Part shown: positions 5,418 through 52,557 of the stretch, piece by piece | How the letters are laid out: each line of letters starts with the position of its first letter | Position numbering within the stretch: the stretch's first letter is position 1 | DNA from: Saccostrea cucullata | Taxonomy: Eukaryota | Direction of reading: 5' to 3' | Assembly (NCBI RefSeq): GCF_032062105.1 | Contig: NW_026928448.1 | Span: 186,001-250,000, forward strand | DNA length: 64,000 nucleotides | Position numbers and translations under genes: made by a program | The notes under the pieces: generated by a model | Seen by the model: only the letters and a program-made list of their open reading frames with translations | Told to the model about the DNA's origin: nothing | Databases searched by the model: none

Positions 5418-8400
5418 CTGAATCTCGGCTGTGATCTGATTTTTTGTCTTCTTTATTCAATGGACATCTCTTTGGTACCTGTATTGAATAGAAATAAAAT
5501 AAAACTGATTTTAAATGAAAGGGTCAGGAATGTGAAACTATCATTTTAATTTTTTTATTTGTGTGGGTTTATTTGATATATATTTTATAAGCGGCATTAT
5601 CTGTCTAATTTAAAAGGCCTTTTGAAAAAGGATGAATGGGAGGATTCTGTTGTTGATTGAAATACAATCTTTTAACAGGTGAAAAATATCTGATTACTTT
5701 TAACCTCACACTTGCTTGATAGTCAAAAGTTCACCAGTGAAATAGATAAAAAATCTTCCAGGGTATTTCCCTAAATGTAGGAACGCAGTTATAAATAGAA
5801 CGTACTGACTGATCTTCTTTTGAGCTGTATCTCGGGGTAGTTATAATGTCTCTGATAGGAGGTCTGGGAGCTGCAACGTGGAAAATTCATATTTTTAGCA
5901 ATTAGACTAATCACAACGTGTTCTAGTAAATAAATAAATAATAAAATCGTGTCAAGGTTCATAATTTCAGAAATGAGTCAAAACGGACTTCTAACGTTTG
6001 CATAACTTATATTAAATCTAAGGTAGTGCATCTCTAATAAAGAAGAATGCAATAAGTGTGACCATACGTTCTATCTAGGGGGAGCTTAGCTAGATATATC
6101 CGTCATCTTATAAGTAACTCGGAACACTCAAGAACAACAAAATACAGGATGTAGGAGTCCATTCGTAAACACAAAATTCATCGGAAAATGTGCCTTAGTG
6201 ACGTCGCATCAATTTTTCGTTTCAAAAGGAGAATACAATTGCTTTGGGGTGAAGAAGGACCTTGATCTGAAAAAAAATATTTGTCATTTATATTTTTCTT
6301 TTTCTTTTACGTCTCAAATATATTAAAGAAGATATATCATTAGGGTTCTTCCTTTATTGTGAGGAAATTGATTGACAAATACTATGCACCACCGTGTCTG
6401 ATTATTTAAAAGTTTTTATTTTTTATCTTACCGGACCCATTACTTTGTCCATGATTGGATTTTAAGCACATATAAAAAAAAATATGTCTGTTAACATGGA
6501 TCTTTTAAAATCTTTCAGAAAATGATACTCTATGTTTAAAGAATTGAAAAAGCAGGTTTGTCCTCTCACACTGCATCTTGGGAAAGGAAAATCAAGTAGA
6601 CTTTAAGACACCTTAAACAACAAAACAAAACTTAATTTGCAAAAGATTCTATCATTCAGTAAAAGTAGATATAGGTCCTTCACTCTTTTTTTCATTTTTT
6701 GATATGGTGAAACTGAGTTTGATATTCCACATGACAATTACAAATTTGATAACATGTATTGTAAAAAAAGAACATTTATCGCAAAAGATTCTTCATTTGA
6801 AAGAGCTAAAATTGAATTTTTGCATTTAAATAAATATGAGATATATATTTAAAAGAAAAACTGTGATATTCATTAATCTGAAAGAAAAATGGAACTGTCT
6901 ACCATTAGAATATGTACTGCTAAATTGTTCTGTTTGAGTTGACCCCCCAGCTGCTCCAGCTACTTATAATTCAAACAATGAATGTTTTGTAAATTGATAT
7001 TAATTTAAGGCTTGCATATACATGTCTTTTATAAATGAGATGATGAATGTTGATTTTTTTTTTCTCTTCTTTTTGGATACAAAAACTTCACCTCTTACAA
7101 GATGAACATTAAGTTTATTTTGTCAAATTAGTTTGCTGAATCCAAGGCTCCCCAACTTTGGCTGTAAACTTATTAATCACCATATTCATGTAATGGGGTA
7201 AAAAAAATATAAAAAATATTCAAAATGACATCATTATAAAAGACATAATCATTATAGTTAAAATTCTCGAGGACGGGGAAAACCATCTACGTGTATGACG
7301 TTAAATGTAAGCTAAATGAGCGAAATGATATATACCTACAGAAAACATCCTTCATCAGCTGTGCAAAAATATTTTTGTTTCCCGTTTCACAAAATATATT
7401 ATATACTGATTATATCTTTTTTTTCACAATAACACTGACAGTGTATTCACCGAATATGATCTTGATGTACTAACAGATCGTGTTTGACGTCACCGACTTG
7501 CTGGAAGCGAAAAGTAAGAAAACAGAGGAGTGAAACACCATATTCCGTAATTTGTTGTATTTACAAGAACTTTAAAACATTGTACTATTTTTTGTAAAAA
7601 TGTGGTAATTTAAGGGGGCCGACTATAGTTTTATTGTATGAAAACTACAGTAGCGAAACTCTTCAGTTTTATACCATATATAACTTACATTAACTTCAGT
7701 GTACATGCAAAGTTTGGGGGAAATCTACCGTCCAGGTATTTTTGAGGGACCGTCTCAAAATATAGGTACATTTACTAAAGGATGATATAGGAAAATGCCA
7801 ATTTTTAGCACTTTAAAGCAAATTATACAAATACTACAATAGACATTTTGTTCAAACTATAATATTTCATGAGTAATACTATATTTTACAATATATGTAA
7901 GAAACACAAAATTCTACCGTCTTGTTAACAGAGGGGGCATCTCAAAATGCAAAAAATTAGCAAATTTTACTATTTTTATAGAGTACTACAAAATATGACG
8001 TAAACAATGGATTCACAAAAAACATAATAAAAATATTCGAGATATTCCAAAAATTCTATGTTTTAAATTTCAAGAGCATATGTTTATTACTTTTTCTTTA
8101 ATAATATTTTTATTAACCCTTTCTTGAAGAGGTACAGATTAACATAACGTCAAAAAGACACTGCAGCGACGTCAACTTACCTATCAATTGCAAAATCGGT
8201 TAAATAACCAGTTATATCAAATTGTAATTACATTTTTATACCTATAATTTCTTAATTTTGTTTAATTTTAATAATAAAGCGAAAAAAAAATGCAGTAAAA
8301 CAGTAAACAGGCTTCATTTTACTATGATGCGCGAAATATTGCGCAATGGAAACTATAGTCGGCCCCCTTAAGTTAAATACTAAATAGTCAAAAAATATCT

Positions 8401-11400
8401 AAGAAATGGTGGCTTACAGGTTTTCATTAATATGGTCAAAAATCGCATCTTAATGTGTTCCCATTTTCTAACAAACCTTGTTCATTACTTACCCGGTCCT
8501 TTTCTTTCAGATAAATATCTTCCTACATCTGTTGGCCTTCTTTGTAAGGTTATCTAAAGAAGGACCAGGCATATGTATTTAGCGTAAGTATCTTCTGATT
8601 CTATTTATCACTTTCTTTATAGTTTAAAAGCATTACTGATTACTATGATTTTAGTCTATGAAAATATACTAGTAAGTCTTTCTTTATTATTCATTCTTAT
8701 TCCTATATATGATATATATATATATATGATAGTGATATGATAGAGATATATGATTATCTCCATATATTTCATTCGAATTCGTTAAAAAATCAATTTTCAT
8801 CTACAAAATTAACTGTGAGAGATATTTCTAATCACGGAAGTATGTAGAAATAGTAATACTTACTTTTGGTGAATGAGTTTCTTTTGCACTAGTACTCAGA
8901 ATATTTTTTGAGCGAGGTGAATGACCTACAATTTTATATTATAAATATAATCTTAATTATTTCAACCAAACAAGTTAACTTATCTGTAAAAAATAAAAAA
9001 AATTCTTTACTTACTGCAGCTCTTAATTCTCCGGTTCATTTTGATATCAAGTAATACCAATTAAAACATTTTATCCTTCCAACGAATGACATAAAAAATA
9101 TAGAAAGCGCTATTTCTTTTTGTACAATAAAATTCATTATTTAATTATTTAATATTCTACTCAAGTAATTACTATATCCAAATAGCAAATAAAATGTGAT
9201 GCGAGTATAATAAAGGTTCACTTTGATACAAAAAGCATTCATTTCAACAGTGACTTATATGCTTACCCATTCATACTGATTTACAAATATATTAAGTCAA
9301 TTTAAATGTAATGAGGGTAATTATTGTATTGTAAAATATTCATATTCATGATTTGAATTTGACTTTCAGAAATTCCTATAAGCGAGAGATCATGAGAATT
9401 GGTAAGAAAATCAATTTTTTTTTAATTTGTACTGTTGATTAGTTTGAGAAAAGAAAAAAAAATATCTGATTTCCATATGATTTTACTTACTCATAGGTAA
9501 TTCCTCCATATCAAGCTTAAGCATCAAAGGATCTAGATCCTTTGAGAGCTGAGGGTATCCCAATCTCTGGGCTAACTTATAAGGAGTTTCATTTTGCTTG
9601 TTTCGTGTTGTTATGGCACTGTCAAAACCTCGACAGACTTTTATTGCTTTGCAAAACTGTGAAAGTCCATACTTTGCACCGAAATGTAACATCGTTGGCA
9701 ATTCACTGTTCATCTGAATACCTAAAATGTGTTCTCAGTAATGCATTTATAAATAAATAAATAAATAAATAAATGTTTTTCAAAATGTTTAAACAGTCAT
9801 TTAATTTTAATTCTTTTATTTCGCAAATTTTGATTGGCATTTAAATCACATTCAACTTACTGCTACCACAACAGAAAAATTGAATTAAATTTACTATGAA
9901 CAATTTTTTCTGCATATAAAAAATCTTCCTTTGTCTATTTCAATCATGTGTGTTTGGGGAAATATAAATTTCAAATTTAAAGAGCATTTGATGTACCATT
10001 TAATATGTCTTGGTTACTAAATGTCTTCAGACATGATGAACTGAAACCATCTCTACTTATCCTATCGCTGAGGTCTTTATCTAAATTTTCTCTTTCTTCG
10101 ATGGAAAGTTTCAAAACCTGACACAGGAACTCGACAGGGGATATGATATCGCCCATCTCCTGATACAGAAATTCCATTTTGTCGCCCACACTAAGGTTTG
10201 TAGAACCCTCGTTCTTGCCATCCACATAGACGGTGATCTGTGATTTGCCAGGAGGTAAACCTGAATCATAAAATTGTTACCTTTTGAAAAACCGTTAAAA
10301 ATAACTAAATTTGTTTTAAAGCAATTTAAACTAAAAATTACCTTTAATTAATGAATACACCTGTAAAGTATGAAACCCTTAGCATTAACTGTTAAAACAT
10401 TATGGATAAGGTTTAAGTTTGGGGGGTGAGGGTTGTAAAAGTGGGACATTTTCCAAAATTATGGTCAAGAGGTCATTAATAAATTTGGTGGTATTCAAAG
10501 AAAGGTCCTGGCACAAGGAATACATTTGTGAAATATGAAAGCCATAGCTCCACCTATTCAAGTAACTTAAGTCACTTAAGTAATAGATACGTAATGGGGC
10601 AGTGTATATCATTATTTGCAGTCTGCATACAAATGTAATATAATTTAGTGAAAGAAATATTAATAGAGAATAATACATATCCTTTTCCATATCACATCCT
10701 ATATCAGCCCATGACAAAATCATGGCCCTCTGGCTGATAAGGTCATGATCAAATGATTGGAAAAGGGTATGTTTTATTATGTTTATTACATACTTAGTAA
10801 TAAAATACGGCACAGATTAAGTTGAGAAGAAAATATGTAAATAATCATGCACGGATATCTTACATGCACACGATATATTGTCTCATACGGTTTGGGTTTG
10901 TTTCTATTTCTATTTCAAATGTGCCCGATCCGTTATTTGAAAATATTATTTGTCAGTTAGATTATCCTAACAATCTAAAAGTTAAAATTAAGAGAATATG
11001 TACCCCCAAAATATGTGTATGAGAACAAGTCCTTTTTTTTTTTTTTTTGGTTTAATTTACTAAGGGTGTGATATTGATCCGTATCAGTCCCGCAAATCCA
11101 TATCAGCCCTGTAGGGCTGATACGGCTATTGTGATGTCAGGCATATCGCATATATGCAAAAATCCTGTATTTATTACTAAGTATGTAATAATACATATTA
11201 TTCTACTTCTTCTGTAACTTTTTAAAGCATTTAATGTTTAAAGCATCAAAATTTTAACATTTTGATATAATCTAAAAACTGAAGGATAATTAAACATATT
11301 TTAGTCAATGACTTTGATAAAAGTTTAGCATTTTTTAAATTCTTAATTGTACATTGGTGAAAAGAATAAATAAATGTTTTTTTCATGTCTTACCATATGG

Positions 11401-52364: not shown

Positions 52365-52407
<43 letters not shown>

Positions 52408-52557
52408 ACCATATAATAATTAATTAAAATGTTTGTTTCAGGTATACCTGAAAAGAAACCAAATGGAACTCCACAAGAAAACGAGGACTATAGCGCAGTG
52501 GTTACAATAAACGAGTCATCATCAGAACTACTAGACAAGCTTAGGATATCAACTTAA
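50775..52557 (+). CDS. Uncharacterised small protein, family member F (~165 aa; acidic tail)
   Basis: Exons 50775-51039, 51670-51726, 52273-52332, 52442-52557 (498 nt). LIPTLQDIEK...LRAELEKFKLNLKKY aligns with member D IPTPKELDK...LKLEVEKLELNLQKF. Confidence 0.75.
52052..52179. mobile_element. 128-bp near-perfect palindromic IS3EU-like MITE in an intron of gene F
   Basis: TACGGAAGCCCGTTGAGGCCAG...CTGGCCTCAACGGGCTTCCGTA with 6-bp TSD CTGTAG (52046-51, 52180-85). Confidence 0.88.

What the first reader, a model, noticed from the sequence alone, without database searches (positions are those of the whole stretch)
5418..52557. Repeated head-to-head arrangement of BCAP-like TIR adaptors and an unassigned small coiled-coil/DSG family
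Seen: the layout <-A <-B ... D-> ... <-C <-pseudo ... E-> F-> shows the same pattern twice, with minus-strand BCAP-like genes pointing away from plus-strand members of one small-protein family (B/D ATGs about 8 kb apart; pseudogene/E about 4 kb). Known: BCAP links TLR/MyD88 TIR signalling to PI3K. Inference: the two families may have been duplicated together as a unit and may be co-regulated partners, e.g. adaptor plus small regulator or decoy. I know of no description of such a pairing. Chance co-duplication of neighbours is the null explanation.
Basis: partly seen in the sequence, partly recalled or inferred. Interest (0 to 1): 0.8.

Follow-up and report, generated by a model that had tools for sequence, protein, structure and literature searches.

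The report
Oyster BCAP-like cluster with orphan neighbours
An oyster-only family of three small helical proteins sits among a tandem cluster of BCAP/Dof-type TIR adaptor genes, and oysters have kept the two families side by side, but nothing yet shows that they work together.

Summary
The layout is real. The window (Saccostrea cucullata) carries three minus-strand TIR-DBB-ankyrin genes (A, B, C), a 5' remnant copied from C (psi), and three plus-strand genes (D, E, F) of one small family.

- **D/E/F are real genes.** D equals NCBI LOC134277603. E and F are spliced at GT..AG introns in RNA contigs from four studies. First-exon dN/dS against S. echinata is 0.09-0.38.
- **The family is oyster-only.** A profile search of 1.84 billion proteins found 19 relatives. 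Every one that carries a species name is an oyster, and the rest are unlabelled assembly contigs. They fall into three old groups (D, E, F). No Pfam or PDB relative was found.
- **Linkage is conserved.** B|D is head-to-head in S. echinata. C-like|E then F is kept in Crassostrea virginica and C. angulata. In Ostrea edulis no BCAP-like gene lies within 10 kb upstream of either E copy.

Against a paired module: start codons are 4-11 kb apart, so there is no shared promoter. Three further BCAP-like genes (A in the window, Z and Y left of it) have no partner. D/E/F look more diverged than B/C. Co-expression and binding could not be tested.

Best reading: inherited neighbours in an old segmental-duplication cluster. 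The scan had already noted the BCAP-like tandem family in the adjacent window of this genome.

The parts
931..3284 (-). BCAP/Dof-like gene A. Exons seen: TIR-like 2781-3284, DBB 1890-2240, ankyrin-like 931-1263. The 3' end was not resolved.
   Evidence: The DBB exon scores 30.8 bits against PF14545. Paralogy to B and C is 24-40%. A groups with Z, the gene to the left of the window.
9486..12442 (-). BCAP/Dof-like gene B. Exons: TIR-like 11978-12442, exon 2 at 11389-11526, DBB 9980-10276, ankyrin-like 9486-9734. The 3' exons below 9486 were not resolved.
   Evidence: DBB scores 36.7 bits. B is 49-56% identical to C. The S. echinata orthologue is 68-78% identical and lies head-to-head with the D orthologue. 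TIR-exon dN/dS is 0.28.
20764..21889 (+). Small-family gene D: six exons encoding 205 aa. Two long helices (residues 7-37 and 49-83) are followed by a disordered tail carrying the PIQEEG and HPPSKTDSGI motifs and ending in SSL.
   Evidence: The exons map residue for residue onto P0001, which is LOC134277603. AlphaFold2 model. Exon-1 dN/dS is 0.38.
32632..36489 (-). BCAP/Dof-like gene C. Exons: TIR-like 35956-36489, exon 2 at 35520-35657, DBB 34481-34882, ankyrin-like 33983-34369, and a 3' exon at 32632-32697.
   Evidence: DBB scores 39.6 bits. The AlphaFold2 model of the TIR exon has BCAP TIR (5FOR) as its best structural match, Z 11.5. Crassostrea orthologues lie head-to-head with E. The 3' exon matches C. 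virginica.
39244..40014 (-). Pseudogene psi, proximal part: the rest of a TIR exon plus an exon-2 remnant, copied from the 5' end of C.
   Evidence: tblastn gives 44% identity to the C TIR exon. Contig C23684 aligns here and also aligns to C exon 2. No DBB or ankyrin exons follow.
39997..43101 (.). A 3.1-kb insertion that splits the psi TIR exon in this haplotype. It contains inverted arrays of a 21-bp repeat.
   Evidence: The insertion is absent from the colinear contig C23684. Tandem arrays lie at 40229-40406 and 40730-41100.
43102..43209 (-). Pseudogene psi, distal part: the N-terminal piece of the TIR exon.
   Evidence: tblastn gives 55-58% identity to B and C TIR residues around 50-96. 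The piece is contiguous with the proximal part on C23684.
47531..48531 (+). Small-family gene E: four exons, about 117 aa. Introns at 47756-47874, 47912-48356 and 48408-48493. The third exon carries HPQSKTDSGI.
   Evidence: Spliced GT..AG joints appear in contigs of four runs from four studies. Splice sites were checked. The S. echinata orthologue is 80-84% identical with dN/dS 0.21.
50775..52557 (+). Small-family gene F: four exons, about 160 aa. Introns at 51040-51669, 51727-52272 and 52333-52441. The third exon carries DSDTIVAQPDS.
   Evidence: Spliced joints appear in four runs. P0003 (LOC134281271) is 99% identical. The reading frame and stop were checked. dN/dS is 0.09.

Best explanation
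The window shows part of an old, oyster-wide gene cluster. A lineage-specific tandem expansion of short Dof/BCAP/BANK-type adaptors (cryptic TIR, DBB, ankyrin; about 460-500 aa) is interleaved with a three-member orphan family, D, E and F.

Each small protein has an N-terminal helical hairpin of about 85 residues and a disordered, acidic and serine-rich tail with a conserved D-S-[GDE]-[IT] motif. In D and E this motif reads HPSSKTDSGI.

The two head-to-head neighbourhoods (B|D, and C|E followed by F) existed before the Saccostrea/Crassostrea split and have been inherited as neighbours.

Shown here: both families are real, D/E/F are transcribed, spliced and under purifying selection, they are restricted to oysters and to this locus, and the neighbourhood is conserved.

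Inferred: the pattern arose by segmental or tandem duplication of neighbouring genes and persists by descent. The small proteins probably act as hairpin-mediated oligomerising or docking modules whose tail motif is a phospho-regulated binding or turnover site. A link to the neighbouring adaptors is possible but unproven.
For: - Domains: DBB domains in A, B, C and Z. A TIR fold for the first exon, with BCAP TIR 5FOR as top match at Z 11.5.
- Gene reality: D equals P0001 exon for exon. E and F are spliced in RNA contigs of four studies. dN/dS is 0.38, 0.21 and 0.09 at dS of about 0.4.
- Restriction: only 19 hits at E<=1e-3 among 1.84 billion proteins. All that carry a species name come from Saccostrea, Crassostrea/Magallana or Ostrea, in three well-supported groups. 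There is no Pfam, PDB or Atlas relative. D, E and F occur only at this locus in the genome.
- Synteny: S. echinata has the B orthologue head-to-head with D, and E then F about 45 kb further on the same contig. C. virginica and C. angulata have a C-like gene head-to-head with E, followed by F.
- psi is a partial copy of C.
Against: - Conserved head-to-head linkage in at least three oyster genera for an orphan family found nowhere else could also reflect functional coupling or shared enhancers. I could not exclude this.
- The BCAP-like tree leaves B, C and the Crassostrea gene as an unresolved three-way split, and the small-family tree has no outgroup. The order of duplications is therefore not established.
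- The interval between D and E in other species, and the O. edulis gene upstream of D (497 aa, identity untested), were not seen.
Confidence: 0.62

Rival explanations
1. Functional module. D, E and F are lineage-specific regulators, decoys or co-adaptors of the neighbouring TIR-DBB-ankyrin adaptors. Selection keeps each pair together, for instance through shared enhancers.
For: - The orphan family occurs only inside this cluster.
- B|D and C|E head-to-head arrangements are conserved across species and genera.
- The genes are under purifying selection.
- The tails carry conserved short motifs of signalling type: HPSSKTDSGI in D and E, and PIQE(E/V)G plus a C-terminal S-S/T-L in the D type.
- BCAP paralogues mark an immune-like cell cluster in C. 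gigas (bioRxiv 10.64898/2026.05.15.723513).
Against: - Start codons are 4-11 kb apart, so no shared promoter.
- A, Z and Y have no partner or relic.
- Both E copies of O. edulis lack a BCAP-like gene within 10 kb upstream.
- Paralogue depths differ: B/C are 49-56% identical, D/E/F 26-32%, at similar orthologue rates.
- There is no expression or binding evidence. The small genes are not named in the supplements held for the single-nucleus atlas.
Confidence: 0.18
2. Local de novo birth. The ancestral small gene arose in the oyster stem lineage from non-coding DNA or transcripts upstream of a BCAP-like gene, and was then copied along with, or next to, its neighbour.
For: - No relative carrying a non-oyster species name was found among 1.84 billion proteins.
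- The proteins are simple: a helical hairpin plus a disordered tail.
- All members lie upstream of, and head-to-head with or downstream from, BCAP-like genes in one cluster.
Against: - No non-genic homologous sequence in an outgroup was examined.
- Fast divergence of an older gene beyond detection is equally possible for an 85-residue coiled-coil.
- No similarity to the BCAP-like genes themselves was found, but that says nothing either way about de novo origin.
Confidence: 0.15
3. D, E and F are not real protein-coding genes but chance open frames or annotation artefacts.
For: Pairwise similarity within the window is weak, at E about 1e-4 to 1e-5.
Against: - Spliced transcripts.
- Orthologues in four or more oyster species with conserved exon structure.
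- dN/dS well below 1.
- Profile scores of 89-106 bits for every copy.
Confidence: 0.02

Closest known systems
Dof / BCAP (PIK3AP1) / BANK1 adaptor family (Pfam DBB, PF14545; BCAP TIR structure 5FOR)
   Same: A, B, C and Z have a DBB domain above the Pfam cut-off, followed by an ankyrin-like exon. The N-terminal exon has a predicted fold that best matches the cryptic TIR domain of BCAP. This order matches the TIR-DBB-ANK architecture described in PMC5241739 and PMC7128310, and the eumetazoan Dof/PI3KAP family that includes C. gigas in PMC7260276.
   Different: Products are short, at about 459-497 aa in annotated relatives, against the roughly 800 aa I recall for vertebrate BCAP. No conserved YxxM motif was seen in the recognised exons. 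There is no sequence-level hit to any TIR in Pfam or the PDB. The genes are expanded into a tandem cluster of at least five copies plus a fragment.
Divergent (bidirectional-promoter) gene pairs
   Same: Head-to-head orientation of B|D and C|E, kept between species.
   Different: By my own knowledge, classical pairs have start sites under about 1 kb apart. Here start codons are 8.3 kb (B-D), 11 kb (C-E; 4.3 kb from psi) and 5.3-6.8 kb in relatives, with repeats in between.
beta-TrCP phosphodegron DSGxxS (as in IkB-alpha and beta-catenin; recalled from general knowledge)
   Same: D and E share a strongly conserved ...KTDSGI... core in a disordered tail.
   Different: The second phospho-acceptor at the canonical spacing is missing (DSGISI, DSGISM, DSGIDM, DSGIGM). 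F has DS[GDE]TIV. Nothing was tested biochemically.
Taxonomically restricted (orphan) gene families embedded in tandem immune-gene clusters
   Same: The family is confined to one clade (Ostreidae) and one locus. The proteins are short and partly disordered, evolve fast, and are nevertheless under constraint.
   Different: All three paralogues predate the oyster radiation and are kept in every genus sampled, which is more stable than many young orphan genes.

Membership tests
Dof/BCAP/BANK (DBB-domain adaptors) | DBB domain (PF14545) above the curated cut-off | tested here: met
   A 30.8, B 36.7, C 39.6 and Z 43.3 bits against a cut-off of 22.2. The whole-genome scan finds the strong hits only in this cluster.
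Dof/BCAP/BANK (DBB-domain adaptors) | Ankyrin repeats following the DBB domain | tested here: inconclusive
   A conserved exon (..LPTMLHFGAKxGL..) follows the DBB exon in all paralogues and orthologues. No Pfam ankyrin model matched it at E<=1, and it was not folded.
Dof/BCAP/BANK (DBB-domain adaptors) | N-terminal cryptic TIR domain (BCAP/BANK1 type) | tested here: met
   The AlphaFold2 model of the C first exon has pLDDT 72 and pTM 0.70. The VIA-align top hit is 5FOR (BCAP TIR) at Z 11.5 over 121 residues, and eight of the next nine matches are also TIR domains. 5FOR has the best TM-scores among the Foldseek matches listed. Caveats: CheY-like receiver domains score within 1-2 Z units, and there is no sequence-level hit.
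BCAP proper (PI3K adaptor) | Tyrosine YxxM motifs that recruit PI3K p85 | tested here: inconclusive
   No YxxM is conserved among A, B and C in the TIR, exon-2, DBB or ankyrin exons; single non-conserved matches only. The C-terminal exons were not resolved.
Bidirectional-promoter gene pair | Head-to-head genes with start sites under about 1 kb apart | tested here: not met
   ATG-to-ATG distances are 8.3 kb (B-D), 11.0 kb (C-E), 4.3 kb (psi-E), about 5.3 kb in S. echinata and 6.3-6.8 kb in Crassostrea. An RNA contig begins at 47416, 115 nt upstream of the E start codon.
Bidirectional-promoter gene pair | Correlated expression of the two genes | not testable with these tools
beta-TrCP DSGxxS phosphodegron | D-S-G-x-x-S spacing | tested here: not met
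   D and E orthologues read DSGISI, DSGINM, DSGISM, DSGIDV, DSGIDM and DSGIGM. F reads DS[GDE]TIV.
Taxonomically restricted gene family | No detectable homologue outside the clade, yet transcribed and under constraint | tested here: met
   19 hits at E<=1e-3 among 1.84 billion representatives, and every hit with a species name is an oyster. No Pfam, PDB or Atlas relative. Spliced RNA. dN/dS 0.09-0.38.

The most novel reading that the evidence does not exclude
An oyster-specific family of hairpin-plus-motif proteins, born beside a BCAP/Dof-type TIR adaptor, has been kept head-to-head with its neighbours because the small proteins regulate them. They might do so by docking on the TIR, DBB or ankyrin module and carrying a phospho-switch or degron (HPSSKTDSGI). 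That would make this a lineage-specific adaptor/regulator gene pair in invertebrate innate immune signalling.
Probability: 0.15. Interest if true: 0.65.

Novelty: new member of a known kind. Interest (0 to 1): 0.38.

Why it matters
Oysters have greatly expanded innate-immune signalling families, and most of the lineage-specific partners are unknown. This work defines an unnamed, oyster-only protein family of three old paralogues, with a conserved linear motif, that lives only inside a cluster of TIR-DBB-ankyrin adaptors.

If the neighbours do work together, it would be a tractable example of a newly evolved regulator of a conserved adaptor. If they do not, the locus is a clean example of how segmental duplication and slow rearrangement keep unrelated genes interleaved for a whole family's radiation. 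That is a caution against reading function into repeated gene order.

Tried and rejected
- **Pfam on the small family.** Scans of D/E/F exons, full-length D, and all 18 aligned members gave only scattered sub-threshold coiled-coil hits.
- **PDB sequence searches.** Searches with D, with the C TIR exon and with a TIR-exon profile gave nothing meaningful.
- **ESM Atlas.** Feature and structure look-alikes for D and F gave no usable hit.
- **Relics of the small family.** An HMM scan of all six-frame open segments of the window, 40 kb to its left, 10 kb to its right and all fetched loci found no relic next to A, Z or Y, and no similarity to BCAP-like exons. The only extra hit is a partial copy 1.4 kb downstream of O. 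edulis D.
- **O. edulis gene upstream of D.** Only 190 bases of this 497-aa gene are held. A relaxed search of them was uninformative.
- **Literature.** No paper names any of the LOC, XP or UniProt identifiers. The supplement files held as text for the C. gigas single-nucleus atlas do not contain the two small-gene identifiers, nor the names Bcap4 and Bcap5.
- **Full-length BCAP-like proteins.** They could not be searched. The word search accepts only candidates of 0.55-1.75 times the query length, and no single exon is long enough.
- **Joined exons.** Spliced models were handled exon by exon by reference. The only full-length small proteins used (P0001, P0003 and others) came from the database.

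
Full report
**What the window is.** The window is G000:C10585:186001-250000 of a 1.17-Gb assembly with about 31% G+C. The D gene translates exactly to NCBI "uncharacterized protein LOC134277603 [Saccostrea cucullata]" (P0001), whose longest contig has the same length as C10585 (336,465 bases). The organism is therefore the hooded oyster.

**The minus-strand genes.**
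- Stop-free frames and tblastn within the window show three paralogous minus-strand genes. They share the exon order first exon, short exon 2, DBB exon, ankyrin-like exon.
  - A: 2781-3284, 1890-2240, 931-1263.
  - B: 11978-12442, 11389-11526, 9980-10276, 9486-9734.
  - C: 35956-36489, 35520-35657, 34481-34882, 33983-34369, plus a 3' exon at 32632-32697.
- The DBB exons pass the Pfam cut-off for PF14545.
- The first exon has no sequence-level match to any TIR in Pfam or the PDB.
- Its AlphaFold2 model has pLDDT 72 and pTM 0.70. Its best structural match is the cryptic TIR of human BCAP (5FOR, VIA-align Z 11.5, 121 residues aligned). Eight of the next nine matches are also TIR domains, and CheY-type receivers follow within 1-2 Z units.
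- These are therefore Dof/BCAP/BANK-type TIR-DBB-ankyrin adaptors, the family described for eumetazoans including C. gigas in PMC7260276 and structurally in PMC5241739 and PMC7128310.
- Annotated relatives are short: 459 aa in Crassostrea and 470 aa in S. echinata.
- No conserved YxxM motif occurs in the recognised exons. The PI3K-adaptor role is not established for them.

**Extent of the cluster.** A genome-wide DBB scan finds the strong hits only on this contig.
- Z (C10585:179730-182183, minus strand) is a sister of A.
- Y (about 165488-166135, plus strand) is weaker.
- Both lie to the left of the window.

**The pseudogene.**
- TIR-exon pieces lie at 39712-40014 and 43120-43209. There is an exon-2 remnant near 39244-39427.
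- Contig C23684 is colinear with window 37905-51206 at 81-94% identity, so it is probably the other haplotype. It carries the TIR remnant uninterrupted.
- The window haplotype therefore has a 3.1-kb insertion at 39997-43101. The insertion holds inverted arrays of a 21-bp repeat.
- psi is closest to C and has no DBB or ankyrin exons. It is a partial copy of the 5' end of C.
- In Crassostrea the C-like gene faces E directly.

**The plus-strand genes are real.**
- D has six exons spanning 20764-21889, which reproduce P0001 exactly.
- For E and F I laid contigs of four runs from four studies on 47400-52600. One run is recorded as RNA-seq; the other three are listed only as probable RNA. All four show spliced joints at GT..AG boundaries.
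  - E introns: 47756-47874, 47912-48356, 48408-48493.
  - F introns: 51040-51669, 51727-52272, 52333-52441.
  - Such joints cannot come from genomic DNA.
- E encodes about 117 aa with its stop at 48529-48531.
- Against S. echinata, first-exon dN/dS is 0.38 (D), 0.21 (E) and 0.09 (F) at dS of about 0.4. The B TIR exon gives 0.28.

**What the small proteins are.**
- Pairwise they are only 26-32% identical. They share M-x-(x)-IPT..E, two long heptad-like helices and ..L.L..(F/Y).
- D and E share an exon encoding HP(P/Q/S)SKTDSGI. F has DS[GDE]TIV(A/T)QP(D/E)S.
- AlphaFold2 on an 18-sequence alignment gives two confident helices (residues 7-37 and 49-83, pLDDT mostly 84-94). The rest is disordered apart from one low-confidence helix at 170-184.
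- A profile search of 1.84 billion representative proteins found only 19 hits at E<=1e-3. The ten clusters I looked up carry names only from S. cucullata, S. echinata, C. gigas, C. angulata, C. virginica and O. edulis. The remainder are unlabelled assembly contigs.
- A tree resolves three groups with orthologues in several genera. The E group and the D+F group have 100/99 support, and D and F have 89-91. All three paralogues therefore predate the oyster radiation.
- There is no relative in Pfam, the PDB or the ESM Atlas.
- D-type proteins also conserve PIQE(E/V)G, which fits the TRAF-binding consensus I recall, (P/S/A/T)x(Q/E)E. They also end in S-S/T-L, a class I PDZ-ligand pattern.
- The DSGI core resembles a beta-TrCP degron but lacks the canonical spacing.
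- These motif readings are leads, not findings.

**Distribution and linkage.** In this genome D, E and F are the only copies. Haplotig copies of E and F lie on C23684, and a copy of F lies on C11719.

| Species | Arrangement seen |
|---|---|
| S. echinata | B orthologue (TIR 78% identical) on the minus strand, about 5.3 kb upstream of and head-to-head with the D orthologue. E then F lie about 45 kb further on the same contig. |
| C. virginica, C. angulata | A C-like 459-aa gene on the minus strand, 6.3-6.8 kb upstream of E, followed by F. NudC follows in C. angulata. |
| O. edulis | D, then E and F, then a second E copy, in the same order over about 130 kb. No BCAP-like exon within 10 kb upstream of either E copy. 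The 497-aa minus-strand gene 9.8 kb upstream of D could not be identified. |

**Does this show a functional pair?** The linkage is far beyond chance for two unrelated families in a 1.17-Gb genome, but common descent from one duplicated segment explains it. Several points count against a dedicated module.
1. Start codons are 4-11 kb apart, with repeats in between, so this is not a bidirectional promoter.
2. A, Z and Y have no small-family partner, and an HMM scan finds no relic.
3. B and C are 49-56% identical. In exon trees they form an unresolved three-way split with the Crassostrea gene, on stems of 0.27-0.66 substitutions per site. The D, E and F groups sit on stems of 0.5-0.9 and are 26-32% identical, although orthologue dN is similar. 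The two families therefore do not obviously share one duplication date, though rate differences could hide that.
4. The Ostrea E copies are not closely flanked by a BCAP-like gene.

In favour of a link:
- The orphan family exists only here.
- Both neighbourhoods are kept in orientation across genera.
- The tails carry signalling-type motifs.
- BCAP paralogues mark an immune-like cell cluster in C. gigas (bioRxiv 10.64898/2026.05.15.723513).

Co-expression, interaction and outgroup synteny could not be tested with the calls available.

**Verdict.** The most useful new result is the definition of an oyster-only three-paralogue family with a conserved TDSGI motif embedded in the BCAP/Dof-like cluster.

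Noticed in passing
window 53508-55089 (minus strand): A fibrinogen-related (FReD) gene. Four exons match Pfam Fibrinogen_C at 36-72 bits and together cover profile positions 2-220. It lies just downstream of F. In C. angulata the gene after F is NudC instead.
   Followed up: partly
window 40229-40406 and 40730-41100: Two arrays of a 21-bp repeat in opposite orientation (AAATAGTTTGTACGATTTAAG and its complement). They lie inside the 3.1-kb insertion that splits the pseudo-TIR exon. The element type is unknown.
   Followed up: partly
G000:C23684 (13.5 kb) and C11719: C23684 is colinear with window 37905-51206 at 81-94% identity, with several indels. C11719 carries an F first exon identical to the window's. 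These are probably uncollapsed haplotypes, so copy counts from this assembly are inflated.
   Followed up: partly
L010 3730-6183 (C10585:179730-182183, minus) and L011 9488 to L007 135 (C10585:165488-166135, plus): Two further BCAP/Dof-like genes lie to the left of the window. Z is a sister of A, with DBB at 43.3 bits. Y is a weaker DBB plus ankyrin match on the opposite strand.
   Followed up: partly
window about 29200-30300, 45900-46200, 49700-50100, 52700-53400, 56500-57400: Repeated copies of one interspersed element with open frames containing ..AFNS(I/T)FR.IDDVL.INN.. and ..YDK(H/R)DDFNF.IVNFP... The two copies tested (at 29580-29825 and 56544-56795) have no Pfam hit. Copies also occur in the S. 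echinata loci.
   Followed up: no
L003 12567-12755 (Ostrea edulis, plus strand): A partial extra copy of the small-family helical domain (E 3.6e-6) lies about 1.4 kb downstream of the O. edulis D gene. It may be a pseudogene or an unannotated exon.
   Followed up: no
window 52273-52332 compared with P0003: The F motif reads DSD in the window allele, as in S. echinata, but DSG in the annotated S. cucullata protein P0003. One RNA contig follows the P0003-type allele across this exon. The third motif residue therefore varies within the species.
   Followed up: partly
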